Shown: positions 312-40,038, numbered from the stretch's first letter. The stretch is 42,248 nt of DNA from Perkinsus chesapeaki ATCC PRA-425 (GCA_013115145.1 JAAPAO010000292.1:1-42248); one strand, 5' to 3'. Translations and numbers: made by a program. The notes: generated by a model from the sequence alone, not told the origin.

Positions 312-1049
312 TGTATATATGCAGGTTCTATCGTGGCTTCACCGAAGCCACTGGGCGCAAAATAAGTCCACATTCATAAATTCCTTACCGCGCTTTCTCT
401 AGCACACGACTTTCGGATTGTCTCTCATTTGAAGTCACGCATGTTTTCCAACCTTTGTTACGGTAGCTCCTGGATCAGGAGCCTTGATACTGACATGTTT
501 CCATGTTTACCGCAAAGCATGCGAAGTGTCCTCTACCATATTCCGGTCGCAATACACTTTCTGACTTTCAGACTTCTTCCACTAATCAAATACTCCGGAG
601 CTGAACAACGTCTGTAAAAAAGCGAACCTCTGCATCGAAACTCGATGATCGAATCTGTCACACAATCTCATGTCACCGCAATTGTCTCGCGCTACGGCAT
701 ACGATAGATCATTAGCTATTGCGTTATCGTTGTTTGTTCTAGGTAATAACTTTACTTGACGCTATAGTATTTAATCAGCAACTAGTATATGGTGCTTTCG
801 ACCCGGCTGTCTCTTCGTTGCCGATCTACTTGGACGGAATTGTCGTTTTGAACCCGTTGTGTCAGGGCGACCGAATTGCCACGGTGACACCTCGGTCACG
901 TTTATAAAGAGGTAGGTAATAAGCATTTGTGAGCTTATTTATTAGCGTAGGCCAGGTCATTCTATGGGCACTAGCTCGATATTAGTTGTGCTATGATTTC
1001 TATACAACTTAACGAGTGTAGAAAGCTGAGAATGGTTATCTTTGCCTTT

Positions 1050-1388
1050 GTAGTTGCCAGTTTGCTATTAGCTTCGTGATCTACACAGTTGCACGCATAC
1101 GTTTGGGTTGGAACTTCTTTCTGGCACTCAACGCCCTTGGAGTGTCATTCAAAAGGAGTAGAGGCACCAGCGTCACTCATTAGGAAATGGAGGTTTAGCA
1201 GCGATATAGCAGCTGATCGGTACCTAGGCACCATTTCTACAGATGCTGGGCATAGTTATGGAGCACCCGTCTACACCCAACTGGTGAGCCAAAGTGGAGT
1301 GCAGAACGGCATTGGTGCGGCTGATAATGTGCATTTGCACAACACTGTCCGCACATACTTCACTGCTTACTTTCTGTCAATGATTTAA
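1050..1388 (+). CDS. Probable exons of an unidentified protein (3' end)
   Basis: Last exon reads GTISTDAGHSYGAPVYTQLVSQSGVQNGIGAADNVHLHNTVRTYFTAYFLSMI*. Against the duplicate near 13984-14088, four of the five differences in the conserved part are synonymous in this frame. No family recognised. Confidence 0.35.
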
Positions 1389-1800
1389 ATTCGATGGTTC
1401 GTTCGCATCAATTAGAATACTCGAGTTGCAACTCAATACTCACATCCGACAACAATTACGAGTTATGATATAAAGGCAGTCGCATGCTCGTTGTTATGCA
1501 ACACAGACTGATTAGCGGCTCCGAGGCGGGGAAGTCGCCGTGTCCATTATGAACTTCATTAAATCGACATCGCTTATAGGGTACTGTCCGGCTTGGCGAA
1601 GAGGAGATTCTCCGACCGTATTCGGTCTCGTTGCAGACAAACCATGCTTGATAAGGAAACTGACAACAGTGCTCGAATATGATGCCAATGAATGTGGATT
1701 ATGCACGGTAATCATACAAAATATCAAATCGGTTTTGCAAAGTTTTCAACACTTGAGCGGAAGAATCTTCAAGCTCATACTGCACGTATGCTCGCACACA
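1232..1800 (+). repeat. ~570-bp direct repeat, copy A (copy B at 13925..14507)
   Basis: Long near-identical stretches, e.g. gtgagccaaagtggagtgcagaacggc... through ...ctcgcacaca, in both copies. Confidence 0.97.
1512..1800 (-). pseudogene. Orphan 3' fragment of the ankyrin-repeat gene (duplicate of 14212..14507)
   Basis: VVSFLIKHGLSATRPNTVGESPLRQA is ankyrin-like. Homology to the second locus stops at 1800 and no upstream ankyrin exons follow. Confidence 0.6.
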
Positions 1801-2202
1801 TCCTGCCTGGGGAACTTGGCTGCTTGGGCACCCAGGAGACCTGGGATAGGTTCGTGAATTGTTCCGAAAATGAGTTGGGTTTGGACATATTCAATGTTTG
1901 AATGATCGACGCTCTTAGCCACGGCTTGCTGGGTCAACCCAAAGGGTCGCCCCTTAAGGGAAACGTAGTTCGGGAATGCCGCTACTGCTAGCAACTGATC
2001 CGTGCCAAACGGGCTCCACTTCTCCAAATAACTTCCGATCGTAAACAAAATCCTTACGGTGCTGTATATAAATCTCAGCCGGTCCCTCTATGCATGTTCC
2101 CCTGCTTCCCCTGGGTATTTGCCTTCTTCAGCGCCTTATTCAAGGCTTCATAGGCCTGTTTACGAGAAGCTAGATTGGTTTGTAGAGCGAACCGAGCGTT
2201 GA

Positions 2203-2490
2203 GCTACTCAACGGCGTTGAGTAGCCAACTGGGCTTCCTGGAAAACTTCAGCTTCCTGGGCCGATCAAACCTTCCTTCCTTAGTAAGGAATCCTTACTTG
2301 ATCGAACTGGCAGTCATATTTCTTGCAGAAATGTTCTGCAGAATTGTAACATTCAATGCTTTCCTAAGGAAAGTTTCCTTGCATATAATTTACCGAAGTC
2401 ATGTGATGATTGATGATGTATACTATATACAACTCAACCAAGCCGGAATAGTCAATGGTTTCCAAATGAAGTTAGTTAGAATTTCTAACT
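2203..2490. repeat. Cluster of palindromic hAT-type excision scars
   Basis: Perfect 22-mers at 2276-2297 (T=TTCCTTAC) and 2359-2380 (T=CTTTCCTT). Degenerate copy at 2318-2339. Palindromes with a 1-nt spacer at 2203-2225 (11-bp arms) and 2474-2490 (8-bp arms). Confidence 0.8.
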
Positions 2491-2510
2491 GGGAAAAAGC
2501 TAATGAAAAA

Positions 2511-5450
2511 CTAGTCTGACGAGAGGTCAGAATCAGAGTTCTTCGAAATCTTGTCAACGCCCTCACTTTCGTCCACAGAAGCAGCACCTGCCTCGGCAGC
2601 ATTACGAAATCCCGGAAGCCTCGGCCGGTGGAAGTCTCGAGGGCCGGACAGTTCAGGATGCGGCTGGATAGCCAGAGTTCGATCTATCACTGTCGAGTGA
2701 ACTACATGTTTCTTGGCAAACTTGGATGATTTCTTCCGCCTGAAGCCAGTGAAAGATTCTGGCATCCTATCAAGGCTTGCCACCAAGAAATGGTCGACAT
2801 TGGAGGCTGAAAGCCCCAAGCTATTCCACATTAAGAGAGATTCATCGGCAAGCCCGGCATGACCAAGATGGCGACGAGCATCGCAACCATTCAGCGTAGA
2901 GCACTGAGCCTCGACAACACTCTCGCAGTGAGTCTTTAGGGCCACACACGCAATCACGAAAATGCAATCCTCACATCCACCATAGAGCCGAGACTGCGTG
3001 TGAATATCGGCCCAAATAGCGCCCATATCGACCATCTCGCCAGGCGGAAGTGGTAAGCAATTGGCGCGGATGCGGTCGCGGAGCTCTGCGTACTGAAGTT
3101 TCAATGCTTCAATACCAGGTTGCTCTTGTAGCTCGGGTTTGAACCCAATGACAAACTCAGCAACCACGCCGAAGAAGTCTATCGGACTTCGCAGGGCGGT
3201 CAGATCTTCATGAAGACCGTAGCTGTCGAGGAGATAGTCATCACGGTGTAGACAGATCTCATCACGACTTCCTAGGAGTGCTTCTCCGCTTAGACACTGG
3301 CAACAAGCTTCCAGCCACTTCGGGGTGTCTTGAAGAATCCTCCTTTTCAGCGCGGAAATGAGCTGTTTCATCCAGTCGATGCAAAACTGCAGTGACAGTT
3401 CGAAAATCCATGGAGATATGGGCGATAGATCCACGCCCTGCCAAGACCGTCCAATGAAGTCGATATCACGAAGAGTGGGTAGAGCATCTACGGAAAAGTA
3501 CCGAGGTTCTAGTCCTTCGATGTGCGCCGCTCTAGGGTCAGCGAGCTCGCTCACAACATCTCGGAGGGTCTCAACCTCTGCGCAGGCAATAATCAAGGTA
3601 TCCCGTAACGCATGCACTGCCGTGATAACTTGCCAAGGCCTCCGGTTCACAGCCTGTGCAGTGCATGAAACACCTGCTATGATGTTCATGACGTCATAGC
3701 ACACAGCGAACTTTACAAGCCAATCTAGTTTCTTGACCTGGGGAAAGTTGTCTACGCTACAGATGGCTCTGAAGTTCTGCACAAAGTTACGGTATACACG
3801 AGCCTCACTTGATGCCCATCGTGTAGCCGAGAAGGCCAGAGGAGCTGCAAACCTTACACCAAGCTTGGACGCCTCATCTCTGAGGTCCTCATATGCATTA
3901 CCGTGCCTGGACGGCATAGCGGGATGTAGCACACTTCTGACATCAGTCGTTCCCTTGTGCGAATCGTTGATAGCTAATTCTATACGATGCGCTACACACC
4001 ACGAGTGGTACAACTGGTCAGCGTCACAAGCCAGAGCTTCCCTCAACCGGCTCCAGACACGAAGACCGTGATACTCTCCGTCTGTCGCCAGGGCCACCAA
4101 GTTACTCCGCAACTGCTCCTCATCGAGGCCGAAGCACACAAGAGTGTCCACCAAGAGCTCGGTCAGTCCCTCACCCGTCTTATCAGTTACAACCGGGGCT
4201 GATAAGAGGTACGCAACGATTTTCCCGCGTACAAGTACCATCCCACAAGTAGCCTGCAGTGTGCGACGCTGCACCGTGACCTTGTCGCAACTCGCCGCAA
4301 TGGGGCTGCTGCGACCACCAAAGCAAGGCTGGCGGTCCATGAAAACCGCTACCATCCTAGCTTTCATCTCGGCCACCATGGCTCTAATGAAGGTTGGCAG
4401 AAAATGAGTTCTGGAATGATTCTTATCACCGAAGATAACCCCATTTTCAGCCTGCAAAGCCAGTGGACGCTCAAACGAACGGTGGCTCTGCCCTTCACAG
4501 ACGCTGAAATAGGCCGTCCTGGCAACGGCTAGCGCCTCATTTCTCCTTGTGCTCGCAACCCCGGAGTCAGCAATTGCCACTGATCTAATATGGGTAGCCA
4601 CATCTAAATGCTTCTTCAATGAAGACAAGATATCTCGCTGACGTTCCGGAGGGGGAATCTCAGTACCAAGGAGAAATATGCCGATACGGTCAAAGCTTGC
4701 AGGTCTCTCGTTGCGCGGGATAGACCACTTATGGAGATCACATACGGTACAGCGAATCTTAAGTGAAACCTCGTCAAGTTTGAATGGACCGATGGCACCG
4801 ATACGACGACAGAAATCGATCTCACGTCGGTGAGAGGCATCCCTAGACAGATGCTCATCTAGCTTGGCTGTGAGTCTATCGATCTTCTGAGACTGAGCCA
4901 TGAGTAGACTTGCCAATCCGGTCGTACTGAAAACATTGGCTGGCACCGGAGCTTTCTGGCCAATCGGGCTTGCCGTTTTAGGACGTGCGGGGGCCGCAAG
5001 CTTTGGTAAGACTTGAGGAGGTGAGGCAGGTCCTCGTGGTAAGAAAGGAGCATCGCTTCCCCGAGCTGGGCGGCAAGGTGCAGGACTAGCCGGAGCCCTG
5101 GAGTGCGCTGGAGCCCCAGGAGTTGCCGGGCCACTCTCTGGCTCTTGCGAACCTCGGGAGCCACCTCTGGCGGGGGAATTCAGACCTTTGAGAAACAACA
5201 AATACGTGACTGGAATTAGACGCCCAGGCGGTTCTCCCTTACTTTCGCTCTCCCTCTCACTGCATGTCCTTTTTCTGGGCAAAGGCTTGAACATATCTTT
5301 CAAAGAGCGTTGTCCTTTCTCAGTTTTGTATCTCTCTGGCATACCAGGATGGTGCTTATTGAAATGATCATAAAGACGGAAGTTGTCCTTTCTGCCCTTG
5401 TAGTCGCAATAGTAGCATTCGAGGGTTTCCTTCGACGGAGCGCTTGACAT
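2511..5450 (-). mobile_element. hAT-superfamily DNA transposase, apparently intact (979 aa ORF, or 960 aa if the 57-nt intron 5186..5242 is spliced)
   Basis: N-terminal CxxC..H...HH Zn finger. Candidate catalytic motifs SCDKVT, ATDGE, CVAH (CxxH), SATRW and C-terminal CESVVEAQCS. In-frame gtaagg...ctcaaag intron at the same position as the intron in the second copy. TIRs not found. Confidence 0.88.
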
Positions 5451-5565
5451 TTGTACGGATGAGTGTTAACACGGAGATAATAACTCTGACAATTTGGAGT
5501 ATTTTTCCGACTTGGAAGTTTTAACTGGTCGCCAGCAGGCCCACCTCCTTTCAAAGGATTGGTTC

Positions 5566-5964
5566 ATACTATTAAGTTAATAGTATTAACTTGAAGTTGA
5601 TAACTTCATAGGTAGTAGTTGGCAGTTACTAGCAACTACTCATAAACTAATATTTATACTAAATGCCCGTGCCGCATGACTGACTCCGGCGTCAATTTCT
5701 GTAAAGCTTTGTTAGACAGGCTCTTTCTCGTGCGGAGATTGCGCTCGCGTGCGGGGGTATGCAACACACCGTGTACTTGCGTGCAATGTTTTCAGCCGAG
5801 CTGCTTGGGACTCCCAAGCTGTGAGAGAATCAGGAATCCTGATTCAGGATTCTCTCCCAAGTTGGGAGAGAATATATAAAAATCACCTAATTGGGCGGAG
5901 TTCAAGAGGCATCTCTGGGCTCAACCAGGTTGAGTCAACCTCTTCAACTAGGTTGAATCAACCT
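5566..5964. repeat. Dense cluster of palindromic excision scars upstream of the hAT ORF
   Basis: Perfect 22-mers at 5569-5590, 5829-5850 and 5920-5941. One-mismatch copies at 5586-5607 and 5943-5964. 1-nt-spacer palindromes at 5803-5819 and 5849-5873. Confidence 0.85.
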
Positions 5965-6060
5965 CGAGAACCATGCTGCAACAGAAGTGCTGTTCATGCC
6001 GCACAGATTCTCCGTCATCTATTTCTTTCCCCTTTTGGGCAAAGACTTTTTTACCTTTGA

Positions 6061-6248
6061 TTCCTCCCTTTTCTTTCTCCCTCTCTTTTTGCCTCCTATC
6101 ATTTCTCTTTCCCTCTCTCTTCTCTCTTTTCCCCTCTCCCCTTCCTTTCCCTTTCTTTCCTTTCCCTTTCTTTCCTTCCCCTTTCTTTCTTTCCTTCCCC
6201 TTCCTTTCCTTCTTCCTCCCCTTTCCTTCCTTTTTTCGTGCCTTCCTT
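6061..6248 (+). repeat. Polypyrimidine (CT-rich) low-complexity tract
   Basis: 6102..6237 contains only C and T (136 nt). Confidence 0.95.
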
Positions 6249-7298
6249 GGCCACAGATGTGGCCGAGGGGCCCAGTTTTCCACCGCACTGCTCAACGCTG
6301 GCACTCCATCCGAGTACTTGTAACTTACAAGTTTGTGTAGCACAAGATATTGTGTGTAGCGTAAAATAGTGTGCTTGTAGGGAGCGCACGTTGTGTGTTG
6401 GTTGCACCACCCGTGGCAGTTTCGGGGTCATCCGGGGTTGAGTTAGTCAGTTGAACTCGCAAAGCTAAGATGTCTCTATGGTCGAGACTTTCATGGCATC
6501 TTCGCAGTTACGCAAGGTTCCAAACCTCTAATTTTTCGTTTCCTCTTTGGGAGGCGCCAGTCTTGCTCCTCTGAAGGCGATTGTCTAAGGAAGACTCTCG
6601 CTACTCTTAGGAGCATCCTGGCCCTGCGATACCTCATCGGAGCGTTCTAGCAGAACTTACTCCTGATCCAGGTATCGCCTCTTCTCAAGCTCCCGGAGAG
6701 GAAAGCGGTTTTAGTAAGCGCAAAACTTCAGAATTACTATTTTGTCTGTTATAAGAAAGTAGCAATCAGCCCATTCACCAATTCTTCAGGGCCTAGAAGT
6801 ATCATACTTCAAGTATGAGACTCTACTGTGAGCCTTCACAGCTTTGGGAGCCTAACGAGGCGTGACCTTATTAAAACTTTAGAACAGTACAGGGTCAAAG
6901 CCAGATTCGCTCCTCCGTTTTGCGCCTATCGTGAACGTGTCTTTGGGATTGTGCGTCTCGGACACATCTTATCTTCGAAGGCGGAGCACCCCTTGCACTT
7001 TGCAATGTGCTAATCCTACCCGATTGTGAGCCTTTAACAGTCAAGAAGACTCTTCTTGAAAGAGCATGGGTCAGCTCCCTACACACATTCCGAAACAGTC
7101 TAATATCACGATTACTTCGAGCAACGTCGCGGTTAACCCTATCTAAGTCAAGTGCTCTAGCTCGCGCCTCATTTATCGAGAAAACGCCGTGTGTGTATGA
7201 CCGAGCATCTGCCATAGTAGTGCTCTAGTGGTTCTTAACCACATCAAGAATGGGAAAGGATCGTCTCGCGTGACGATGGATTAACGAGTCTCAGATGG

Positions 7299-7320
7299 AT
7301 CACTCAGAGTGATTCACTCT
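7299..7320. repeat. Perfect 22-bp excision scar (T=ATCACTCT)
   Basis: atcactc-agagtgat-tcactct. Confidence 0.85.
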
Positions 7321-8258
7321 GGTTCTCACGGGTGCGCTTCATCATAAGAGCGAGAGCCGAGGCCCCTTGGTTTGTATAAGAAGATGAGCTTGATGAAGAG
7401 GACATTTCAACTTGAAATTTTCAAGCACGCGTGCCAAATTGACACATGGATTATTCGATTGAAAAATTTAATTCACCCTTTGCGGTCTAGGTCCGCGGCG
7501 ATTATCCGTATAATATACGATAATCGCCCAATTCCCTACATAACTCGGCAGAAGGATCCGCACCATCGGTTGAAAATGATGGGTCGCCCGGCTACAGGCT
7601 TTCCGGGAGGTAGAGCTTAGGTACCGCAAGGGGGGGGGGAGAAGGTAGTCTTGTATAAGACATTCTCACTATATAATATAAGACATCTCAACAACGTTGC
7701 ATGATATTAATTAATTTTCCACATTTTAAGCAATCACAGGAATAACATTTTCACGTTGACTGCAAATGCTTTGATGTTTTGATGCAAGACTGCTGAACAG
7801 TCACTGGTCTAATTACAAGAGACAAAAGGCAAGGACCCTAAAGCCTTCTGGAGGCCAGACCCTAAACTCTCTGGAGTCCAGAGCCTGGACTCCGCACAGA
7901 TACTGGACTCAATCGCTTTAACAACGTATTCGAGGATGCAGTGTGCGCCCAAATTGGAGCTCAACTCGGCCTCATTCGAGATACTCAGGACAAAATACTG
8001 GTGGCACTGCTGAGAAAAATCTCGTAAGACTGGACTGAAACCAGATTTATACCGGTACGGTGATGAATCATAGAATCACTAAGAATCACTCTAATCATGA
8101 CGCTGCCGAGTTGCATGGAGCACCGCTAGAAAACATTGATTGATTATCAATAACGAAGGTAATGCGAGGAGCGTATGCAATGTGAGATTACAATCGCATT
8201 GTTCGAAGTATGATAGCTTGAACGACTAACAAAACTCTTAGACAGCATCCATGCGCGC

Positions 8259-11200
8259 TCAGCGCGCCCTGCTACGGAGCGTGCCAGCTGTACAATTCCC
8301 GGGAGGGAACTTCATATGTCGCTCCCGTTTCTGCCTTATCCACGTCTTTATATGACGGGCTTCCAACTCTCGACACTCACGGACGTCGGCTCCATCCTAA
8401 ATGTTATCGTGAAAGGAGTCAACTTGTCTGCCGGCTTACCTCATCTCTTGAGAACATAAGATCTGAGTGATGTGCTCCGGTGTCCATTATGACCGATACG
8501 ACAGATGTAGGACATGGCATCACTGTGCAGTCTACACCTTGTGGGACTTCTCCTTCCGAGACGGAAACTGAGAATACAAACATAACAGTAAGTGTGTTTC
8601 GCAGTGTTACAATATTGAAGTACGCAGAAAACGTGCTAAATTATCAAAATAAAAAATTGAACGAAATTATGCAAAAACTGCAACCCAGTTTCGCTCTATC
8701 CAATCCAGTCTTGCAGCTACGCCCTAATTACTAGGGTGCTTGCAAGGAGAAAATCGAGCATGAACATGGCTAGTATGGAACATGCAGATTTAAATAAGCA
8801 AGGAACCAATGAAAAGGTATATAGAGGCTTACTAACATTAAGATAACCTGAAATGCAATATAATGAAGTGAATATGTTTCTATTATATACTATTAAGTAT
8901 AGTCCAGTCAAAACTGACTGAGTTAGTCATGATATATCTGTAAGGGCACTGTTAGATCTCACCTACCCATGGGTCGAACTTTCCATTAGTGAAGACAACG
9001 TTACTCATACTGGCCACAGCGTCCGCCATATTCCTCACGAACTGTAGGCTGGCCCGGGCTCTAGTAGTAACGCCATAACTGCAGAAAACTACATTCTAAA
9101 CCAATCCAGTCCGAGAAATGCTACATCTGTTTGCAGTCTGCCTTGTACGAGTCCATATCGAACTTATTGGTCGGCCAGAACATGTCATTCTCTGTACCCT
9201 GACCAGAAACGTGATAGGGACAGAAACGACCGGGCATCGCTGTAGATCAGCACGACAGCCCACCTGGTGAAATCCCCATGGCATCTGCGTGCACTCTTGG
9301 AAGCTGTAATCGCCTTCGCACGTATTTGGATAGTGGAATTCCATTTTGCTGAAACGATTAGTATATTCAAATAAACAAATCACCTCATGCTTAACTTACG
9401 TAGCATTGACGCACTCGGCGTTTCCCGAGGCATTATAGTAAATGTTGAGCGATTCCGCCAACGCTCGCAGGCGATCCTGAGAGTACGAAGGAAATTTCTA
9501 ATGTGACAAATGGTGAAAGCGAATCCGTTTTGGAAAGTTTCTGATAATCTTAAATATTTTAGCAGCTAAAGAAGCGTCTCACCTATACCCTCTCACCTTA
9601 TCTGTTCGAGCTTGTTCGAAGGGCGCGCATGCCGTACGAATGGGATTGGCAGGATAATATCCGTGACCACCTGTAAAATAGTTACTAGGATAAGGGTAGT
9701 TACCTAAAATAAGACATAAAAAGTTACCAAACATTCTGTGATGTCGCATTTAGCCGGCCCATTAGAGAGAACACTAGGCCGGATTCACTTAAAAGGTTCC
9801 GGGGCTGGTCAGACCAGCCTAATCTAGAGGCACATAAGAGCTGCAGCACTACTATCAGCCTTGAACTTACCCATGGCAAAGTACGTCCAAGCACAAGGCG
9901 CTGCCGAAGCAGCGAGAAGCGCTGTTAGGTGATGTGAAAGAGCATCAGGGCACCCCCTAATGGATCAATAACACTCCTGTGGAGGCTCAACTTGTACTGT
10001 AAGCGCCAAAACCGATCCGCTTCGTCCTTGAAGCCCTGCCATGCTCCCTGTGATGGTCCAAGTTCCTCAACCAGCTTCAGTGTCGCCTTCAAGTTGAAGG
10101 CTTCAACCTAAAAACAATAATGGGCCGATACTCAGTTCGTGCTAAAACACTTTAATGCTTGACATTGTCGTAACTGTTGTTAATTATGTACCACTCATAT
10201 GAACGCGTAGCCGGTCATTAATAAGTACTAAACATAATCTTCCCGTCGGTGCTCCTTTTTATCGAGGCAGCGGAAAAAAGCCAAAGGTATTGACAAGTTG
10301 AATAACCGAGGATGGAGATGCGATCAATTCGTCAAGATCAAACACCTACGAATTCCCGCTTCGTTGTTTCAATGGCAATATTCATTCGTCCCACGGAATC
10401 AGAGTGCAAGGGATGAACAAGCAGTCTTCATTGCATTTCGTCATCAAACGGGGATAGACTACAATAATGCACGTCGCCTCGGTATTGTCTTACTCTCTCG
10501 CGCATACGGGTCCAGCAGCTCGAGTTACTATCTCAGAAAAGGCGCCCATGCTAGGCTCAGGTGTAACACCGCCAATTGCGAAAATTGGAGCTGAGGAAGC
10601 GATGGCGCCGTCAACTAGGTGGGGATACCTGCCAAGGAACAATTGACACCTTGTCAATTTCTCTTAATGTACGAGCCTGAAACTGGGGCTGATCTACAGC
10701 CACTGCTGCGGGATCAGTGATGCATCACAAGGTGACCTATCGAATTCAATCAATCTCGATATAGCCCTTTGCGAATATTTGATGCAATACTTCGACCCTA
10801 CGAGCGAATGTGTAATGAGAAGAATTTTCTGCGTGAATGTGAACAGAATAAGAGGCTGCTTACCTGTAGCGGAATGCGCTTGCAAGCATACCACCATAAC
10901 TACCGCCAAAAGCGATGGTAGCGGTCGACGGTGGTAGAGAGTTCTCAGCAAATATGTGATCGATTAATACCTATAAGAAGCTATACACATCTTCGCATCC
11001 TTCGCTTCAAGACGATACTCACCGAGTAATCTCCAAGAGCTTGCTCGATAGTTAAGTAGCGTTTGCAATCAGGAGTCCCGTTTGGGTACACTAAGCTTTC
11101 ACCATAGTAGCGATGCTCGGCAAATACCAGCATAGCTCCTAGTTCGGACCTAAGAGACAATGAGTACGTCAGATTCAGTCAACGAGCAATAAGAGTATAC

Positions 11201-11547: not shown

Positions 11548-12659
11548 GTAATATTATGAAAGAGAAAACTGATGAGGGCGTGAATATCAGGTATAAAGCG
11601 CACAGGTTAACGTAGTTGGATCATTCTACTTGAGGATGGCTGAACTCAACACGCTCGCTAAATAGCTGTAGGGGCCTTGTTGGCGTTGAACTCGACATGA
11701 TGGAGGGAAGTGAGATAAGGCTCTTATCTTTCATTGAAAGAGATGTGGTGAGGCCGACAGCTTGGAAGAGCTAAGCATCTGCACGCATGCGGGGCCCCAT
11801 GGCGAGGAGCACATAATATCTTTCGCTGTTCGCTGCGTGATTCGGGCTCCCTCTCGGAGAGGGCCTCTCCCAATTTTAAGCTAGTGCGCGGACGAACAGG
11901 TAGGATTTTAATATGAGATACACGAATTGTATTGAAGTAAAATCCACCAGTGCACCTCTCGGTCACGCACGCGTGCGCATTGTTCACGTCACGGGATTCG
12001 AGGATCAAATGTGTTGGTGAGTCAGCCGAGTCTGGTGACCAGACTCTGGCCTTGACCCAGCCATAACCCCTCCCTTGAAGGGGGGAAGAGGAGTCTCGCC
12101 AGTTTTAGAAGGACATATGACGAGATACCTCTATTTCCGCATAGCTGCTCTGTGTTTTTCCTTAGTTCTGAGAGTAGAGACATTTTTGTGCATGCATGCA
12201 AGTGTGAAGACAGTTTCTTGTGTAACGTTGTTCTCACAAGATAAGTCTGTAGTAGATGTGTCAATCATACAGATGTCAGTCATCTCACAGTGCAAGCTGG
12301 TACATAGACGGTGTAACATAGTCCAACTCGTAGGCAGTCAAACCTTGGTCCAACCTTATTTCGTACAGCGTAATTCATGTGGTATATATACCGTATATCG
12401 TACAGTTGCGACTCGTACAGTTTCAGCTGTGTTTGCATCAGTTGGTGCAGTATTATTTTGTCTCGTTGCACTTAATACAGTATTATTCGGAACAACTTTG
12501 TAAGGTACAGTTACAAGTGTTACAACTGATACAATGCCAGTTCGTGATGCCATTGATTTCACTGAGCGTGAATCTGCAGTGGTTAACCCTAAGTTGGACT
12601 CCACGAAGATGGTTTTATTAACAAACCTCAAGAAAGTCCTCAGTGGTTTTCCGGGCTAC

Positions 12660-13330: not shown

Positions 13331-13551
13331 CATAGTGTGTGACATTACTGCCGTACGTTGGGCTCTACCGAAGCCTTGTTATGGCTGCAACACTTGTCCA
13401 GATCCCGCACTTGGAATCCCGAAGGCGCGGGAGTACAGGAGAAGGTTGTTGTTGTTGTTGTTTGCCTGTATTTGTCTCCGCTTGTACTGTACGGAATAAC
13501 ACTGTATGACGTACAGTGTATGTGTGGATACTGTGCAAAAAGACGATACAA

Positions 13552-13905
13552 TACTGTAGTACAGTTACTGTACGAATCGTAACTGTAGGGCTCAAAAGTG
13601 TATGTGTAGCAACTATAGTATAGTCACTATACGGATAAGGCCCTTATCATAAGGGCTACACGAATAGGTGTTCTGCGACCTTGCATTGTATGATATGATC
13701 CTCACTCCGTAATGTCCATCATGAGACTTCTTATTTTCCTCCAATGAATTTATTAGCCGCCGAAAGCATCACGCATAAAGGTCTTGAAGAAGGCGGTTCC
13801 CTGAGGTTTGAGGTAACCTCAATGAGGTGCTTTGCTGTGCTATGATTCCAGTATAACTTAGTCAGTGTAGGTAGCTGAGATTCTCAGCTACCTGCACTGA
13901 CTAAG
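13552..13905. repeat. Cluster of near-perfect excision scars plus a 24-bp-arm hairpin
   Basis: One-mismatch 22-mers at 13552-13573, 13611-13632 and 13808-13829. A +1-base variant at 13634-13656. Hairpin at 13857-13905. Confidence 0.8.
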
Positions 13906-13924
13906 GAGGCACAACATTAGGTAG

Positions 13925-14507: not shown

Positions 14508-16100
14508 AAGCGAATAGTGTGCCGAATAAGAGAATTAAACTGAATATATTCTGACGATTCTGTAAAGTAACTTCTAAATGTCGAGTGAATAAGTCGAATT
14601 GGTATCCCATGCTTAGTCTAAGCTATTTACTTGATCATTTCCTTCTGTTCGCTCGTGCAGTGCTCCTCCGATCTCGACGCACGGACACAATAATGGAGAG
14701 CTGTGTTGCCGAGATTGTCACTCTGCAGCACATTGGCATAATAGTCGTCAACTAGCTTCTTCAGATCTCTTGCCGTCCCTGCTGACTACTATACAGACGA
14801 CAACAGCGATCGGTACCATATCGAGCACACAATAGCAGAGCTGTCCTCCCATGATGGTCCTTTGTTGAAATCTCAGCTCCTTCATCTAGTGCATGCTCAA
14901 CTGCTTCCTTCGGGTATCCGCCTTTATCAAAACCTTGCTGGATAATTCCCCTCAGCACCAGCGAACTCTCCGACAATCGCGCTGACGCGGTCGATCTCGC
15001 TGTAAGTGGCGGTCTACTCGAGGCTGCATCAGTAGCAGCAGCATGTACGGTACACCCGGAAAGCTGAGAAAGTACCGGTGAGAGCGGTATGGCTGCTCCG
15101 CCGAGGGACTTACCATCTCCAGCAACGCTTCCGCTACCTCTGGATGAGCGTTCCCCCGAACCGCCAGCTGTACTGGAGTTTCACCGCTCTTACTGGGAGC
15201 ATGTGGCTCAGCATTTGCCGCAATTAATAGAGATACGATGCCTTTTACCTATCCTTTAGCGATCTTAAAGGAGACATCCTATTTTTTTTGATTTCCACGG
15301 ATGTGAAACACCAAATATGCATCTAGCCTATCAGTGTCGAAAAAAGTCCCTAATGCGGATGTGTAATATGAATTTTCACTAGAGTACAGTCTGAAAACAA
15401 ATACGTTCCTCCCAGGAGCATTAGGCGCTTCTCTACGACTCTCCACGAGAAACACCCACGGACAAAGTACTATGGGGACTGTTTCTCTCTTTGCGAAGAC
15501 TCCTTCGGAAGGAGTCCTTCCCTATTTGTCGTCGAGTACTTAGAATGTCTACTTACGTCCTCCAACACACTCCACCCGCGCTTGCTAAATATAACCATAC
15601 AATGTTCTCTGCGGAGCGCTCAAGATGACTGCTTTCTTTGGTTACTATTATTTTCAAGAGAAAGTATGTAACAGACCACTAGACCACTACCAGGAGTTCA
15701 CCTGCCCGGGCGACGGCTTCTCCTTCCGCCTAGCCACGAAATGGAGCACACTGAATCGACCCTTATCGCATATCGTTGGATCCGCCCCCATACTCACACA
15801 TTGCTCAACCTGCAACCGACGGGCCAAGTCCAGACTGCTCAGCCGACATCTCCCCTACTTGTTTCTCACTCCCCCATCGAGCGAGCCCCATCAAAGCAGT
15901 CCTGCCGAAGTGATCCGAGCAATTCACTACTTCAGAATCCAATGCGCGGAGCAATCTAAACGAGTCTCTGTCTCCTCCGTTTTCGATTTCAATTATCACT
16001 TTTCTAGCCTCACCGAGGCCTGCTTTTCACTGTGATTGTCGTGCAGCGCCGCGATGAGCTCCTCTATTTTCTCCCGACCACTTGGCGGTTTCTTCGACTG
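14212..16100 (-). CDS. Multi-exon ankyrin-repeat protein (5' end uncertain, may be damaged)
   Basis: Ankyrin-like segments NCSDHFGRTALMGLARWG, VSMGADPTICDKGRFSVLHFVA, AANAEPHAPSKSGETPVQLAVRGNAHPEVAEALL, DEGAEISTKDHHGRTALLLCARYG, SDNLGNTALHYCVR and LIKHGLSATRPNTVGESPL. Confidence 0.75.
15500..15521. repeat. Perfect 22-bp excision scar inside the ankyrin gene (T=CTCCTTCC)
   Basis: ctccttc-ggaaggag-tccttcc. Confidence 0.85.
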
Positions 16101-25413: not shown

Positions 25414-28176
25414 ATGTCCGGTGCTTCTGACCCGTCCCAGGGGCTGGGCCCGCTCTCCGCGTCACAACCTTCCGCGTCACGCCCTGTGACGCCACCAGCA
25501 GCGAGCGGCCCCTCCTCGGCGGCTGCCTTGGCGGCTGCAGCAGTTCTACTTCAGCAACATCAGCAGCAATCGGGGTTCGGGCAGCCTGGAGGTCTTGCGG
25601 CGGGTGACGGTGTTAATAAGGAGGGTCCTGGAGATGACCCAAGAGTTGTTGATGAAACATTTATGAGATGTAAGAAGATCCTGATAGGCTCCCATTGGTC
25701 AGATGCTTCCTCGAACGATTAGTTCTTGTCTTATTCTGAAATAGGGAATTCACATCCGCACATAAGAGTACTAAAGGTGTGTACTCCACAGAAGGGTGCA
25801 TTAGAGACAGTGCTCCTTGTACGGGAACTACAGGGTGATGCGTGATGGGCCCTTTTTTCCGCATCATCCTGTATGTAGCTTGTGAAAAATTCTAGTTTCA
25901 TAGAACTCCTGTGGAGCAGTTTCAATGGCTAAAATCGTGAGATCTTGGTCTGTCTTTTGTCCTGCGGAGTTTTCCGGTACTAATGTATCCTTCCTACCCC
26001 TCAGCTGCCCTTACGGTCGCGCCAGTCCCACCTGGTGACTACACCGAGGAGGAGAATGCGTACTTGGTGGAGCAAATGATTAAACATAGGTGCGCATAAC
26101 GTTTGGTTCATGCGAAGTCAGGGAGTCTATGATAATTATTCGATTATGCATGCGGCATTGCAGCCATTATATCGGAATTTACGTTGCTGTCTGTGAAGTT
26201 TCGGGATCGATTCTTGCGGTGATTTATTTTTAGAGGATTGGCTTGCTGTTGTGTGTAGGGCGCAGTTGAAGGGTAAATTTGAGGGAATGGTGCGAGCAAG
26301 AAATAAGATATATCAGATGATTGCCGCCTCGATGAACAGACGCTTCCCCAACGCTCAGCCTAAAAGTAAGGTAGATGAGTCATCCAGGATGACTACCTGG
26401 GACTTGTGCTCCATACGCAGGGATAGTTACTGGTAACCTTGAACTTTACAGTTCTTATATTTCTTTTTCACAATCACCCGAAATTCAAGCTTACATGAAG
26501 CTTGAAGTTTTGGAAATAAATTTATATCGGGTGTACTTGATGGTACTTATAATCATTACGATTATAACTTTCGTATGGTACTTGTGTAGCAACCACACTA
26601 TAGTTCATTGGGGTAAGTGCAATCGAGGGACGGTGCTTCTACGGAGCCATACAGGGACTTCAGATGTGTCAAGGAGGAACTCCTTTAGCGTATCTTTCTT
26701 TGAAAATATTTCCTACATATTATTACATTTGGAGACATGTATTAGGACTGTATAGGAGAAAGAATTACCTCAAAACTCTCATTTTTGAGGAAGTTACGGC
26801 TGCCCATCGATTCTCCCTCTCTAGATGACCGGTACTGTACATGAACTTCTTTGGGAAAGATTCTTTTCTATGGCGAATTTCATCATATCTTAACAAAGTA
26901 GGCTCCTTCGGTTAGACATCTCCTCCAGGGAAAGTAAATGTGAAGCCATCAGTGTTGGCACTGCTGGAAATAGGTTGTGGATAGGGAAGTGGACCTCCAA
27001 TAAATATTTTCTACCCAACTCCATATCAACATCGCTTATATCTCTCCTTCTTCTCAGTTTCAATATATAACTTTTCATTTCTTCTTAGCTACTTCTTATC
27101 AAAAGGCGTCCCTTCTCCTTCACCGCCGCCGCCGGAGAGTGCATATCTACGAGGCTTGATGACTACATGTTCAGGCACCCTCGAGGTGAAGCGAAGGATA
27201 ACATGCTTGGTGGAGCGAGTTCGTCGAGGAGGAGGCGACAAGTACCCCCACGATCACTGGCACAACATACTCACACGGGAGTATCTCAATTGGCATCCCA
27301 CGTCTATGCCGTCCAGCGCAGACGGCAGTCCTAGACGCTCGGCTGGTATGAGCGGCGGAGGCGGCGGCGGGTCGAGTAGGAGGAGAAGGAAGTCACGCAG
27401 CAGTCGTAGTGGTGAGTTTAGTGGCGGCTTGTTTGGTCAGTGCTCGATTCAATTTTATACTGTATATGTATAGTGAAGGAGCTGTACCGTTTCCTACTAT
27501 TTAACTTCATCTCGAAGATTCCGAAACTTTCGTCATTAGCTCCTTTGTTGGAGTGCTGAACAACAAAGGGGTGCATCATGCGAAGAGAAATTGTATCTTT
27601 CCACTGCTTCTTGGAAGCTGGAGGGCTTTGAGATGAGCGTTAGTAGACTCAGCCTACGGACGCTAAGAAATTCAACACTAAGAACAATTGGTGCTCTTCA
27701 TTGGCTTCTCACCGCTCGAAAGCTGGAGAGCTCCGAGGTGAACGAGATTGCACTTAGCGTGCATGATAATTCTGGTGCTACCTCATATGAGCTGAAAAAT
27801 ATCTTCGACCGCTCACCTCGTTAGTGCTGGGAAGAGCAAACCTGGGGGAAGTTCGACGGATTGTTTAGTGTAAAAATTATTGCACTTCTCAGAGTACAAT
27901 TATGATTCGGAATCGACATCATCGGCGGAGCATCTTTTGGATGGCTCGTGGGCCGAAGACGGAGGCCACATGTCGCTCGAGAAACTTCTGGACAAGAAGG
28001 CTGAATTGGAGATAGCCTTGAAGCAGTCTGAGCTTGTTAAGGTCAGGCTCGAGAGAGAACTGCTGGCAATGGAAACTAAGGAGGCGATGGCCGCTGGCGA
28101 GGTGGCAGCAGCAAGCACGCCTGATGTTTGCCCGCCAGTTCAGTCATCCGTGTCGCCTCAAGATGCAACCTTTTGA
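25414..28176 (+). CDS. Multi-exon putative Myb/SANT-like (trihelix-type) DNA-binding protein with a C-terminal coiled coil
   Basis: Ala/Gln-rich N-terminus. Exon GDYTEEENAYLVEQMIKHR followed by RNKIYQMIAASMNRRFP resembles SANT-like helices 1-2. Basic RRRRKSR stretch and coiled coil LEKLLDKKAELEIALKQSELVKVRLERELLA. Exon joins only partly resolved. Confidence 0.5.
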
Positions 28177-30191: not shown

Positions 30192-30751
30192 CAAGTAAGT
30201 CTCATAAAACCTGCTTTTCTGAACCATTTCTTTCAGGCGCCTCCGGAGCTTCACGACGGCTTACGCTGTCGGTTGGCCTTGTCCAACGTGGGGTGCCGCC
30301 TTCCTGCTCTTTTCGTCCATCTCTTTTTTATATCGTATTCGCAAGTCATGTCTGCAGGGATGCCATTCGGGTTCCTCCATTCGACGCCTATGCGAAGCCG
30401 TGGCGTAGAGCTCCGCCGTGCATCTTTGTATGTGCCCGAAGCCGCGCCTGCGTAGTAGGGGCTGTACCAGTCAGTGCTTGAATGCATCTCGCCAAGTCGA
30501 GTTTATTTTTCCCCACTTTATTGACAAGTATAGCAAGAGTTGCGTTGAGTTTGGTGTAGGAAGGATGCTCCGCTAAGACTACCTTTAGTGGATACGGCGA
30601 GTCCAGAAGGCTGCATGGCTTTGGCACAACTCTCTGGAAATGCACTCTCTTCCACTCCTAGCGGAGCACCGTTCTTTTGGAAAGTGTCCGGCCCTTTGGG
30701 TTAAAGTCAGGCGATGTCATCTACGCTCGCCGGAGTCAGTTTTATGTCATA

Positions 30752-35754: not shown

Positions 35755-35776
35755 CTCCCGAATCGGGAGTCCCGAT
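35755..35776. repeat. Perfect 22-bp excision scar (T=CTCCCGAT)
   Basis: ctcccga-atcgggag-tcccgat. Confidence 0.85.
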
Positions 35777-37300: not shown

Positions 37301-37851
37301 GATCGGTGACACCGATCCATGTTACCGCCGGTGATCCATGTCACCGATTCGGTGATTCACCCGTCTGAAAAACTCCTGATCAGAGACGATCTCATCTCAG
37401 GCTGGAAGCTCAGACGGAGCTCGAGGGCAACAACTATTCCTCGTGAATAGGCACGATGTCCAGAACATTCGGCATTCTATTTTTGCGAAGATCCCATTAA
37501 TTTACCCAAGTTGTACCACTTGTGATGGGTTATCCAACATAAGCACTACTCATCGAATAGTACTCCCCGTGACCCGCACACTTGCAGTCGTCGTCACCCC
37601 GCATGAGCAGTGGTCGGCAGCTAACGGATGACGTCAATGCGGAACGCGTGAGTTTGAGCCTCCATTAGCTTAACAGCGCTTGATTGCAGCCCTCACGTGA
37701 CAGCCCTCCCAAGTTGGGAGTCCCAACTCACTATCCCCGGAGTCAAATGTTTCACTCTCAATGATGCAACGTTTGTGTGATGACCGAATCAGTCAGACCG
37801 ATATGCTTCAGCCAATACGTTGTGGACGGAACCCAGTGGGTTCAACCCACT
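37301..37851. repeat. Cluster of excision scars and 1-nt-spacer palindromes
   Basis: Perfect 22-mers at 37706-37727 (T=CTCCCAAC) and 37829-37850 (T=GAACCCAC). Palindromes at 37301-37317 and 37341-37361. Confidence 0.82.
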
Positions 37852-38170
37852 CCTCGCGCGCTAGTCGAGCGCTCCCCTCCCCCGGCAGGGCCCGCCGAGC
37901 TTATGTTCTAGAGAGGAATGCATTCTGAACCAGTAGTCGACGTAACACTTAGTGCCGTCCGACGGAATCCGGAGATTTAATTTACGGTTTACATTCCTGC
38001 GCCGTCCCAACCGCAGTGCGAGCCTCGTACTCGCATAGCGTAAAGTTCATATTGAGCAGCTTGGGTTGAGCCTGTCGTTATGGGATCAGCAGGGTGCCTT
38101 CTCGCTTCATCGAGAGCCTAATCCCGCTGGCCATGAGTCAGAACTCACACTCAGTTCAACCAAGCTTTTG

Positions 38171-39693
38171 ATGTATACCCTACCTTTTATTATCACATGC
38201 ATCGTATCACACGCCGATGCAGTCGAGGAGTGGCAGCCAGCTGATGGGAACTGTCTCGGAGACTGCAAGGAATGCTACGAGTTCCTATCTCGACCAGTGC
38301 TACCGCATGCCGGAGCTCGTGGATATCTGAACGTAAGGGCAGGAAGTAATGCCGATACGCATAAGAGTCGCTTCCCATGCTATCCTAGGGCACAGTATAT
38401 GATAATCTTAGACTGTATAACTTCGGCTGCTCGGAACAGCAGTAACTTACTGTCAGCATGTACAATACATTCGTCATCGATAGAAATTCAACAACTGTTC
38501 CTTATGCGTTCGAGGTTTACACACAAAGTAGAGAGTTGCCCGTTCCCCACCGGTGTCTTGAACTATAAGCCATATTCAACAAGGGAATTCCTAGTTGAAT
38601 TTCTCGCTTCTTCTTTTCTAAATCTAGTTTTTCCCCTCAGTCGTCGCTCTTTGGGATCGAAGTGCTCAGCAGATTCGTATCCGACCCGGAAGTGTGTGAC
38701 ACTAGTGTCCTTCATCTCATTCACCCACTCCATAACGTCCGCACTCTATCCGCATGTGGTGCCGATCTAGGGGTAGCGATTGCTCAGTGCTGCCAATCAA
38801 CCCGGCAACTTCTATCTGAGATCTTCCCGATGGCGGTTGCCTTGAGTGTACGAGAGGCATTGGATCTGGAGCGTGCCACTAATTTATTGCACAGAACTAA
38901 TCAGTTAGTCGATGAGTTTGCTACCAAGATGACGAGCCTTGTTTCGAATACGACTCTGAGCGTAGATGATCTTATCCCCGAATTTGTGAAAACGATAACA
39001 GCTGTATTAACAATACCCGAGGGAGTGTCGATTCAAAGCACTCTGCAAGCAAGCGGTTACTGGAGACAGTTTATGGAGCAAGCGCAACTCACGTTCGCTC
39101 TGAGTGAACTCTATTCCGAGATCGTCACCGTCAGTGGAAGCTCGGCGACTTTAGATGGCATTCCCCCTATACGTTGGAGCAACGAGATATATGGTCGCCA
39201 CTGGGATGTTGTGACCCACCTGTTCAGCGAAGCTGGAAAGAGGCAGAAGACTAGCTTTGTCGAGATTGGCATGGCCTGTGGTCCAAATGGTAAGGTTCTA
39301 TTACAGAGATATCCACAGTTAAATGAGTATATTGCTATGGATCCAAACCTCAACGAGGACGCTAAGTCAGACTTCATTCAGTTTGGCCGTCGTGCAATGA
39401 TATATCACAATACATCCAGCGAAGTGGCAGAAGTTATTCCTAACGAGTCGATAGATATGCTCTTCGTTGATGGTCCACATACATACAACAATGTTAAGAA
39501 CGATCTAGAGCGGTGGTATATGAAAGTGGCCCCGAACGGCGTTGTAAGTGGACATGATTTCACTTGCCAACATCCGCCTTTGATGTGGGCTGTAGTAGAA
39601 TTCGCACGTTCTGTTGGAGTTGAATACATCAATGTTAGCATGGATGGTGTCTGGTGGTGGATAAAGCATGATGTAACTAGCGATTTGAGTTGA
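38171..39693 (+). CDS. Class I SAM-dependent methyltransferase (Methyltransf_24-like) with a signal peptide or anchor
   Basis: MYTLPFIITCIVSHADA start. C-terminal FVEIGMACG, IDMLFVDGPHTYNNVKNDL, VAPNGVVSGHDF. Short introns in the 5' part. Confidence 0.85.
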
Positions 39694-40016
39694 TACAACC
39701 GACGAAGGCGTTGAGTTATACTGAGCGACCGGAGCGGTACGCTAATGATGCTAATAAATGATACTCGAATTATATCATGGTAGGATGCTCCTAATAGGAT
39801 GTAACTAGGAAGAGTCCGGCAGTGTTTGCAGGGGAATACGCTGATCAGTCCTATCTTTTCGCAAGGGCTTATTGCCGGGCCGGCGAGTGTAGGAAAATTT
39901 GCCGCATCTCACCAACGCTTGTTGGTGAGGAAGTTCAAGGCGTGAGGAAATTTCTCCGGGAGAAGAGGGGAAATCAGTTTTTACAGGTTTGGCCCAGACT
40001 GTGGGGGCAAGAACTA

Positions 40017-40038
40017 CTGTACTGAGTACAGTGTACTC
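40017..40038. repeat. Perfect 22-bp excision scar (T=CTGTACTC)
   Basis: ctgtact-gagtacag-tgtactc. Confidence 0.85.

What the first reader, a model, noticed from the sequence alone, without database searches (positions are those of the whole stretch)
633..40038. Stereotyped 22-bp scar T(1-7)+revcomp(T)+T(2-8): a record of hAT excisions repaired by one fixed route
SEEN: 12 perfect copies at 2276, 2359, 5569, 5829, 5920, 7299, 10086, 15500, 35755, 37706, 37829 and 40017. Each has a different 8-mer: TTCCTTAC, CTTTCCTT, CTATTAAC, ATCAGGAT, CTCAACCT, ATCACTCT, CCTTCAAC, CTCCTTCC, CTCCCGAT, CTCCCAAC, GAACCCAC, CTGTACTC. One-mismatch copies occur at 633, 5586, 5943, 7869, 13552, 13611 and 13808. Each perfect copy fixes 14 positions, so about 1.6e-4 are expected by chance in 42 kb under uniform composition. 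Position 2 is T in 10/12, position 7 is A in 7/12, and all 12 have at least one of the two. ESTABLISHED: hAT elements make 8-bp TSDs, Ac-family targets follow nTnnnnAn, and hAT transposases (Ac, Tam3, Hermes) leave hairpin-sealed donor flanks that give palindromic footprints centred on the complement of the terminal base. INFERENCE: both flank hairpins are opened symmetrically, and the two revcomp-TSD overhangs anneal to give a uniform +14-bp scar. Known footprints are usually heterogeneous. A dominant symmetric product at this density points to a specialised or NHEJ-poor repair pathway, and could serve as a genome-wide marker of past transposition.
Basis: partly seen in the sequence, partly recalled or inferred. 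Interest (0 to 1): 0.92.

Follow-up and report, generated by a model that had tools for sequence, protein, structure and literature searches.

The report
Uniform 22-bp hAT transposon excision scars
This oyster-parasite (Perkinsus) DNA is peppered with identical-format 22-bp scars that are best explained as marks left when hAT jumping genes cut themselves out, giving a readable record of past jumps and of an unusually uniform DNA-break repair.

Summary
The window has 18 perfect copies of T(1-7)+revcomp(T)+T(2-8), not 12. It also has 11 one-mismatch and about 12 two-mismatch copies. Shuffles give none, and unit lengths other than 8 give none.

The organism is Perkinsus, P. chesapeaki or very close. 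The same scars occur in independent P. marinus and P. chesapeaki assemblies.

The hAT reading is well supported:
- ORF 2511-5450 has a Hermes-transposase fold and the D, D, E, CxxH and RW motifs.
- Its relatives sit in elements with CAG... inverted ends and perfect 8-bp target duplications.
- In the window the element's own left junction carries the predicted half-scar.
- In diverged sister copies, every perfect scar is copy-specific. Five scars face a spacing of exactly 8 bp in the other copy, a 14-bp difference. Imperfect scars are sometimes shared.
- T follows nTnnnnAn.
- Scars crowd into and around the hAT copies.
- Shorter hairpin-type footprints are at chance level, so one product dominates.

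Not shown: an occupied allele turning into a scar, and the "NHEJ-poor" idea. Symmetric hairpin opening is not required.

The scan noted this scar in two other windows of this genome. I found no paper describing it. I class it as a new variant of a known kind.

The parts
2276..2297 (.). perfect scar, T=TTCCTTAC, inside 3' non-coding end of the hAT element
2359..2380 (.). perfect scar, T=CTTTCCTT, inside the element end
5569..5590 (.). perfect scar, T=CTATTAAC, inside 5' non-coding end of the element
5829..5850 (.). perfect scar, T=ATCAGGAT, nested in an older compound palindrome 5804-5872
5920..5941 (.). perfect scar, T=CTCAACCT, followed by a near-copy at 5943
7299..7320 (.). perfect scar, T=ATCACTCT
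10086..10107 (.). perfect scar, T=CCTTCAAC; lies on the first bases of an S28-peptidase exon (minus strand); sister copy L007 has one T-like 8-mer
11849..11870 (.). perfect scar, T=CCCTCTCC; sister copy L007 has exactly the single 8-mer CCCTCTCC
15500..15521 (.). perfect scar, T=CTCCTTCC
35755..35776 (.). perfect scar, T=CTCCCGAT
37706..37727 (.). perfect scar, T=CTCCCAAC
37829..37850 (.). perfect scar, T=GAACCCAC
40017..40038 (.). perfect scar, T=CTGTACTC, at the second hAT-like remnant
633..654 (.). scar with one mismatch
5586..5607 (.). one-mismatch scar abutting the scar at 5569
5943..5964 (.). one-mismatch scar, T=TTCAACCT
7869..7890 (.). one-mismatch scar, T=CTCTGGAC
12030..12051 (.). 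one-mismatch scar (new)
13502..13523 (.). one-mismatch scar (new)
13552..13573 (.). one-mismatch scar
13611..13632 (.). one-mismatch scar, directly before the perfect scar at 13634
13808..13829 (.). one-mismatch scar
26372..26393 (.). one-mismatch scar, the only one between 15.6 and 35.7 kb (new)
37781..37802 (.). one-mismatch scar (new)
2226..6290 (-). autonomous hAT-like element, with the 3' tip damaged
   Evidence: Its ends align with the intact P. marinus and P. chesapeaki elements.
2511..5450 (-). 979-aa transposase P0001
   Evidence: No Pfam hit. The AlphaFold model has pLDDT 79.7. The top 12 PDB matches are all Hermes transposase. The D389, D457, CxxH 485-488, R544-W545 and E843/E847 motifs are present.
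6275..6290 (-). 5' terminal inverted repeat CAGTGCGGTGGAAAAC
6291..6298 (+). right target-site duplication CTCAACGC
2203..2225 (+). left junction half-scar: flank GCTA + CTCAACG (TSD bases 1-7) + G (complement of TSD base 8) + reverse complement of the flank; an 11-nt-arm odd palindrome
2226..2246 (+). rearranged remnant of the 3' inverted repeat (only TGGAAAAC is kept)
40243..41884 (+). second, degenerate hAT-like copy (37-57% aa identity, broken frame); ends not defined

Best explanation
The 22-mers are excision footprints of hAT-superfamily cut-and-paste transposons.

Proposed route:
1. Insertion duplicates an 8-bp target T.
2. At excision the transposase nicks one base into each flank and seals each flank into a hairpin. 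The left end reads T(1-7) then the complement of base 8. The right end mirrors it.
3. The host opens both hairpins several bases from the tip. This exposes single strands that are complementary to each other across revcomp(T).
4. The strands anneal, gaps are filled and any flaps are trimmed. Every event then ends as T(1-7)+revcomp(T)+T(2-8), which is +14 bp relative to the empty site.

Shown here: the pattern and its specificity to 8 bp; the hAT elements, their fold, ends and 8-bp duplications; a half-scar at an element junction; the 14-bp presence/absence at homologous sites; the target bias; and the clustering at hAT copies.

Inferred: the hairpin opening distance, the annealing-based joining, and that the resident family (rather than another hAT family) made most scars.
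For: (1) Pattern. The window has 18 perfect, 11 one-mismatch and 12 two-mismatch copies against about 0, 0 and 0.4 expected, and none for other unit lengths. Pooled over 128 kb of Perkinsus DNA there are 38 perfect copies and again none for k=6, 7, 9 or 10.

(2) Geometry. The 7+8+7 layout is what a one-base-offset flank hairpin predicts. Published Ac/Ds footprints are palindromes centred on the complement of the base next to the element, with arms up to 20 nt in yeast and frequent microhomology (PMC5873905).

(3) Elements. Intact elements were found in P. marinus L001 9284-13341 and P. chesapeaki L005 74-3901. Both have perfect 8-bp TSDs and CAGTG/CAGGG inverted ends.

(4) Transposase. Fold search returns Hermes transposase as the top 12 hits, with E down to 2.6e-9. 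The CxxH and RW motifs are present.

(5) Junction. The window element has right TSD CTCAACGC. Its left junction reads CTCAACG+G+CGTTGAG..., an odd palindrome.

(6) Homologous sites. Five scars face a spacing of exactly 8 bp in the sister copy: window 11849, L007 4810, 6212 and 6694, and L003 1968. The spacer equals T at window 11849, resembles T at L003 1968 and L007 4810, and matches T at only 3-4 of 8 positions at L007 6212 and 6694. Three more scars face a single T plus an unrelated nearby indel. All 6 perfect scars compared are copy-specific. The two shared scars are imperfect.

(7) Target bias. T at position 2 or A at position 7 occurs in 64/138 cases against a 26% background, p=2.7e-7. 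This matches the Hermes target nTnnnnAn (PMC10368747).

(8) Location. Ten of 39 scars lie in the 1,125 bp of non-coding element ends (P=5.6e-8). The remaining scars lie closer to hAT copies than random positions do. L001 (3 of 4) and L005 (4 of 4) show the same concentration.

(9) Single product. Partial-palindrome footprints are at chance level.

(10) Age spectrum. Counts by mismatch number are flat at 18, 11, 12 and about 15. This fits steady formation followed by neutral decay.
Against: No site was seen in all three states (empty, occupied, scar), and no non-autonomous element with these ends was found in about 128 kb. The ratio of scars to resident elements is therefore very high.

The three real TSDs (CCTAGACG, ATTCCCTT, CTCAACGC) fit nTnnnnAn only in part, and three is too few to judge.

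The transposase family has no Pfam or PDB sequence match, so its hAT membership rests on fold and motifs.

Language-model neighbours are Buster/ZBED5-like. From memory, that branch prefers nnnTAnnn, and only 5 of 69 scars show it.

Most loci were fetched through hAT proteins, so the density and clustering estimates are biased.

At some empty sites the 8-mer differs from T more than the flanks differ.
Confidence: 0.85

Rival explanations
1. The scars are junctions of programmed or very frequent somatic excision by a domesticated hAT-type enzyme, as with ciliate eliminated sequences. The sequenced cells would carry scars while a germline-like genome carries the inserts.
For: The geometry and the link to hAT enzymes are the same. 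The product is strikingly uniform. Resident elements are scarce relative to scars.
Against: Scars show a graded decay series, and the older imperfect ones are shared between diverged copies, so they are inherited as scars. Perfect scars are copy-specific, as expected for sporadic events. Autonomous copies with intact ends and TSDs remain in the assemblies. To my knowledge, Perkinsus has no known nuclear dualism.
Confidence: 0.04
2. Another 8-bp-duplicating, hairpin-forming transposon group, or a different hAT family from the one encoded here, made most of the scars.
For: The resident family's neighbours are Buster-like, whereas the scar target logo is Ac/Hermes-like. Other readers noted further hAT-type elements elsewhere in this genome (untested).
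Against: Scars concentrate inside and next to copies of this very family in three independent elements. The window element's own junction carries the half-scar.
Confidence: 0.07
3. The scars come from a replication or repair error with no transposon involved. One candidate is a double template switch, in which the nascent strand copies the opposite strand and returns.
For: Template switching can create inverted-then-direct triplets. Longer odd palindromes with arms of 9-24 nt also occur in the window.
Against: Such errors have no reason to use exactly 8 bases with a one-base offset, yet lengths 5-7 and 9-13 give zero. They would not show nTnnnnAn or cluster at hAT copies.
Confidence: 0.03
4. 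The pattern is an assembly or sequencing artefact, or a selected functional hairpin motif.
For: Palindromes can be produced by library artefacts. Hairpins can have regulatory roles.
Against: The scars are present in independent assemblies of different species and dates: P. marinus GCA_000006405.1 and P. chesapeaki GCA_013115145.1. Mutated copies are shared between diverged paralogues. Every copy has a different 8-mer, so there is no sequence-specific motif. One scar disrupts an exon.
Confidence: 0.01

Closest known systems
Ac/Ds, Tam3 and Hermes (hAT) excision footprints
   Same: Both TSD copies are kept except for the base next to the element. There is a palindromic (P-nucleotide) insertion centred on the complement of that base. 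Microhomology is used in joining (PMC5873905).
   Different: Known footprints are heterogeneous: 28 types were seen among 128 events in Candida, mostly with 1-3 nt palindromes. Here a single product, with the whole inverted TSD as the overlap, is the only hairpin-type footprint in excess. It reaches about one recognisable scar per kb.
Hermes transposon (hAT superfamily)
   Same: It shares the 8-bp TSD, inverted ends starting CAG, the nTnnnnAn-like target bias, and the RNase-H fold with an inserted domain. The CxxH and RW motifs are also shared.
   Different: The protein is about 10% identical and 979 aa long, against 612 aa for Hermes. It has no Pfam hAT dimerisation-domain hit and belongs to an unannotated family with 286 detectable relatives.
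V(D)J coding joints (RAG) and Transib footprints
   Same: Flank hairpins are opened off-centre to give P nucleotides.
   Different: From general knowledge, RAG and Transib make the hairpin exactly at the border and Transib duplicates 5 bp. They would give even palindromes and a 5-based unit. Here even palindromes are absent and k=5 gives zero.

Membership tests
hAT superfamily transposon (the elements) | 8-bp target-site duplication | tested here: met
   Perfect 8-bp TSDs flank L001 9284-13341 and L005 74-3901. In the window element, 7 of 8 bases match and base 8 is complemented.
hAT superfamily transposon (the elements) | Short terminal inverted repeats beginning (C/T)A(A/G)NG | tested here: met
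   The ends are CAGTGTGGTGGAAAA, CAGGGTTGGAAAAT and CAGTGCGGTGGAAAA.
hAT superfamily transposon (the elements) | Hermes-like RNase-H fold transposase with an insertion domain | tested here: met
   The top 12 Foldseek PDB hits are all Hermes, with probability 1.00 and about 550 aligned columns.
hAT superfamily transposon (the elements) | Catalytic D, D, E plus the CxxH and RW motifs | tested here: met
   D389 and D457 are invariant. W484-C-x-x-H488 and T543-R-W545 are present. E843/E847 are conserved among the sequences that reach the C-terminus. The spatial clustering of these residues in the model was not checked.
hAT superfamily transposon (the elements) | Sequence match to the Pfam hAT dimerisation domain (PF05699) or related models | tested here: not met
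   There was no Pfam hit for P0001 or P0002 at E<=10, nor for the 40 relatives scanned at E<=0.001. There was no PDB sequence hit. This is a sequence-detection criterion, not a mechanistic one.
hAT hairpin-type excision footprint (the 22-mers) | Both TSD copies retained minus the element-proximal base, with a palindrome centred on the complement of that base | tested here: met
   This is the definition of the pattern. Palindromes with a one-base centre number 59 against 3 expected, and even ones 0.
hAT hairpin-type excision footprint (the 22-mers) | Homologous empty site spans 8 bp (a single 8-mer in place of the 22-mer) | tested here: met
   Five scars face an exact 8-bp spacing, and three more face a single T with a nearby indel. 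The spacer equals or resembles T in three of the five; at L007 6212 and 6694 only 3-4 of 8 bases match.
hAT hairpin-type excision footprint (the 22-mers) | The same site seen occupied by an element flanked by T | not testable with these tools
   No occupied allele was available.
hAT hairpin-type excision footprint (the 22-mers) | Target preference of the family (nTnnnnAn) | tested here: met
   64 of 138 half-sites fit, p=2.7e-7. The real TSDs number only 3, which is inconclusive.
hAT hairpin-type excision footprint (the 22-mers) | Direct demonstration of excision producing the product | not testable with these tools
   This needs an excision assay or read-level data.

The most novel reading that the evidence does not exclude
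Perkinsus resolves transposase-made flank hairpins by essentially one route. It opens them far from the tip and joins them by annealing across the full inverted TSD, rather than by tip-proximal opening and classical end joining. This route has run steadily for a long time. The genome therefore carries tens of thousands of datable scars, a built-in log of transposition. These scars are a major source of 14-bp insertions, gene knock-outs and new hairpin-forming sequences in introns and promoters.
Probability: 0.35. Interest if true: 0.75.

Novelty: new variant of a known kind. Interest (0 to 1): 0.62.

Why it matters
Transposon footprints are normally too varied to recognise without knowing the donor site, so past cut-and-paste activity is almost invisible in genomes. 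Here the footprint is uniform and self-identifying. Each event can therefore be counted and roughly dated by its mismatches, and its target can be read.

This gives three things:
- A genome-wide record of hAT activity and local hopping.
- A natural readout of how an alveolate parasite opens DNA hairpins and joins breaks.
- A measurable mutational load. About 1.3% of this window is inserted scar sequence, and at least one scar hits an exon.

It also reveals a large hAT-like transposase family that sequence databases do not label.

Tried and rejected

2. The duplicated segment 1225-1800 / 13918-14507 contains no scars, so it says nothing either way.

3. The intergenic region between window 36517-38350 and L003 873-1716 is not homologous, so the scars there could not be compared.

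4. The L004/L003 pair at L003 1419 shows a single T in L004, but the downstream flank differs. I left it as ambiguous.

5. A scan for TIR plus 8-bp TSD pairs in the window gave only chance-level candidates.

6. No matching 3' inverted repeat was found for the window element. Its tip is rearranged.

7. The ends proposed for the second hAT remnant (39885 and 42219) have no matching TSD.

8. My first semi-global scoring of collapsed against full scars was mis-set and was replaced by an anchor test.

9. Literature searches for Perkinsus hAT footprints, Perkinsus palindromes and Perkinsus Ku/NHEJ returned nothing relevant.

10. Rfam and tRNA scans of the window were empty.


Full report
**The observation.** It also finds six more perfect copies, at 6796, 7404, 11849, 13267, 13634 and 37125. 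I then counted the minimum number of substitutions needed to fit any T. On that count there are 18 perfect, 11 one-mismatch, 12 two-mismatch and 19 three-mismatch copies. Order-3 Markov shuffles give 0, 0, 0.4 and 4.4. The same construction with unit lengths 5-7 and 9-13 gives no perfect copy.

Palindromes with arms of at least 7 nt and one central base number 59 against 3 expected. Even palindromes number 0 against 2.8 expected. About 39 non-overlapping sites have two mismatches or fewer.

**The organism, and whether this is an artefact.** The 979-aa ORF at 2511-5450 (minus strand) is 68% identical to a Perkinsus marinus protein. Other window genes are 91-95% identical at DNA level to P. chesapeaki contigs. 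The window is therefore P. chesapeaki or very close to it.

The same 22-mers occur in several independent loci:
- P. marinus locus L006: 11 perfect copies in 22 kb.
- P. marinus locus L001: 1 perfect copy in 23 kb.
- P. chesapeaki locus L007: 7 perfect copies in 12.9 kb.
- P. chesapeaki locus L003: 1 perfect copy in 3.7 kb.

A 17-kb P. olseni locus has none. Pooled over 128 kb there are 38 perfect and 31 one-mismatch copies, and none for k=6, 7, 9 or 10. Independent assemblies, and mutated copies shared between paralogues, rule out an artefact. Two other first-stage notes report the same scar in other windows of this genome. I did not test those.

**The transposon.** The ORF has no Pfam hit even at E=10 and no PDB sequence hit. 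An exhaustive search finds 286 relatives. None of the 40 I scanned has a transposase Pfam domain.

An AlphaFold model built on their alignment has mean pLDDT 79.7. Its top 12 Foldseek PDB matches are all Hermes transposase, with E from 2.6e-9 to 1e-5, probability 1.00 and about 550 aligned columns.

The alignment shows several conserved features:
- A CxxC...H...H zinc finger.
- Invariant D389 and D457.
- W484-C-x-x-H488, which is the hAT CxxH motif.
- T543-R-W545, which is the hAT RW motif.
- E843/E847, conserved near the C-terminus.

A scan for inverted ends next to 8-bp direct repeats found two intact elements carrying relatives of this gene:
- P. marinus L001 9284-13341: TSD CCTAGACG on both sides, ends CAGTGTGGTGGAAAA.
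- P. chesapeaki L005 74-3901: TSD ATTCCCTT on both sides, ends CAGGGTTGGAAAAT.

In the window the 5' end is at 6275-6290 (CAGTGCGGTGGAAAAC on the minus strand), followed by the TSD CTCAACGC at 6291-6298. These are hAT-type transposons by fold, motifs, ends and duplication length.

**A half-scar at the element's own junction.** At the other end of the window element the flank reads GCTA-CTCAACG-G-CGTTGAG-TAGC (2203-2225). That is TSD bases 1-7, then the complement of base 8, then the reverse complement of the flank. A rearranged remnant of the inverted repeat follows. This is the product expected if the transposase sealed that flank into a hairpin one base inside the TSD and the hairpin was opened about 11 nt from its tip. 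It ties the odd-palindrome geometry to an identified element.

**Geometry.** By hand, a hAT-type cut leaves the following. On the left, the strand reads a1..a7 joined to a8' a7'..a1'. On the right, read on the top strand, it is a8'..a2' a1' joined to a2..a8. The two unfolded extensions overlap exactly over revcomp(T). Any pair of openings whose overhangs overlap, followed by annealing, fill-in and flap trimming, gives 7+8+7. Without the one-base offset the product would be 8+8+8. Symmetric opening is therefore not required.

Published Ac/Ds footprints are palindromic insertions centred on the complement of the base next to the element. Their arms reach 20 nt in yeast, and microhomology is seen in most joints (PMC5873905).

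**Presence and absence at homologous sites.** Two P. chesapeaki contigs are diverged copies of parts of the window. L007 matches window 8097-12226, an S28 peptidase gene with introns. L003 matches 38.4-39.9 kb. I anchored 40-bp flanks on either side of each scar and measured the spacing in the partner copy.

- The partner spacing is exactly 8 bp for window 11849, where the partner reads CCCTCTCC, identical to T. It is also exactly 8 bp for L007 4810, 6212 and 6694 and for L003 1968.
- A single T-like 8-mer plus an unrelated nearby indel faces window 10086, window 9804 and L007 6965.
- Two scars, L007 5112 and 7072, are present in both copies. Both are imperfect.
- All six perfect scars in the compared regions are specific to one copy.

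Scars therefore arise as 14-bp insertions at a pre-existing site, in both lineages. Older ones carry more mismatches. The flat spectrum of 18, 11, 12 and about 15 copies with 0-3 mismatches is what steady formation with neutral decay predicts. That last point is an inference.

**Target and location.** Symmetrised over 69 scars, T at position 2 or A at position 7 occurs in 64 of 138 half-sites, against a 26% base frequency (p=2.7e-7). T is depleted at position 1 and C is enriched at position 3. Hermes prefers nTnnnnAn (PMC10368747).

Ten of the 39 window scars lie in the 1,125 bp of non-coding ends of the hAT element (P=5.6e-8). The other scars lie on average 4.5 kb from the nearest hAT copy, against 7.9 kb for random positions. 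In L001, 3 of 4 scars lie inside the element ends. In L005, 4 of 4 do. This fits local hopping and self-insertion. The caveats are that coding density confounds the distance test and that most loci were fetched through hAT proteins.

Nested and chained scars at 5804-5964 and 13502-13655 show repeated hits at the same place.

**One product.** Footprints of the form T(1-7) + p bases + q bases of revcomp(T) + T(2-8), with p+q<8, are at chance level. Among recognisable hairpin-type footprints the full 22-mer stands alone. Deletion-type footprints cannot be recognised, so 'dominant' is relative to what can be seen.

**What is not shown.**
- No occupied allele at a scar site was seen.
- No non-autonomous element with these ends was found.
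- The repair-gene content of Perkinsus was not examined, so the NHEJ-poor idea is untested.
- Language-model neighbours of the transposase are Buster/ZBED5-like. From memory, that branch prefers nnnTAnnn, which only 5 of 69 scars show. The resident family may have its own preference, or another hAT family may have contributed.

**Comparison and novelty.** The mechanism class, hAT hairpin footprints, is known. The new points are the uniform product using the whole inverted TSD, its density of about one recognisable scar per kb here, its presence in both Perkinsus species where enough DNA was sampled to judge, and the unlabelled transposase family behind it. Eight literature searches found no description of any of this.

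**Verdict.** The finding is real, the hAT reading is supported with confidence 0.85, and I class it as a new variant of a known kind.

Noticed in passing
window 10086-10107: On the minus strand this scar covers the first 8 nt of an S28-peptidase exon, just after a tttttag acceptor. With the same acceptor the reading frame stops after 5 codons. Collapsing the 14 bp restores a frame that matches the L007 paralogue.
   Followed up: partly
window 6000-6240; L001 9324-9564: A long CT-rich low-complexity tract lies inside the 5' non-coding end of the hAT element. It is present at the same place in the P. marinus element.
   Followed up: no
window 13857-13905: This is an odd palindrome with 24-nt arms (96% complementary) and one central base. 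It is much longer than a scar and may be a long hairpin-derived product.
   Followed up: no
window 1225-1800 and 13918-14507: A segment of about 580 bp is duplicated at 95-97% identity. It contains no scars and differs by a 13-bp tandem duplication.
   Followed up: partly
window 2097, 8072, 18278, 25169, 40505, 41482 and others: There is a modest excess of short tandem duplications of the form X-n-X, with 7-9 nt units and a 1-2 nt spacer. They lack the complement signature. They may be footprints of another transposon type or slippage products.
   Followed up: no
window 28613-30109 and 30677-32152: Two tandem genes encode a thioredoxin domain plus an Erv1/ALR domain (QSOX-like). They share an 89% identical 257-nt block.
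   Followed up: no
window 20434-21465: This gene encodes a PP2C phosphatase with a C-terminal MYND zinc finger.
   Followed up: no
L006 12070-12091: A perfect scar lies inside the 3' end of a truncated (702 aa) hAT-like gene of P. marinus. One hAT copy appears to have been damaged by the visit of another.
   Followed up: no
L003 and L004: The 1.4-kb contig L004 joins the end of L003 to its start. This suggests a tandemly repeated unit of about 3.7 kb in that P. chesapeaki haplotype.
   Followed up: no
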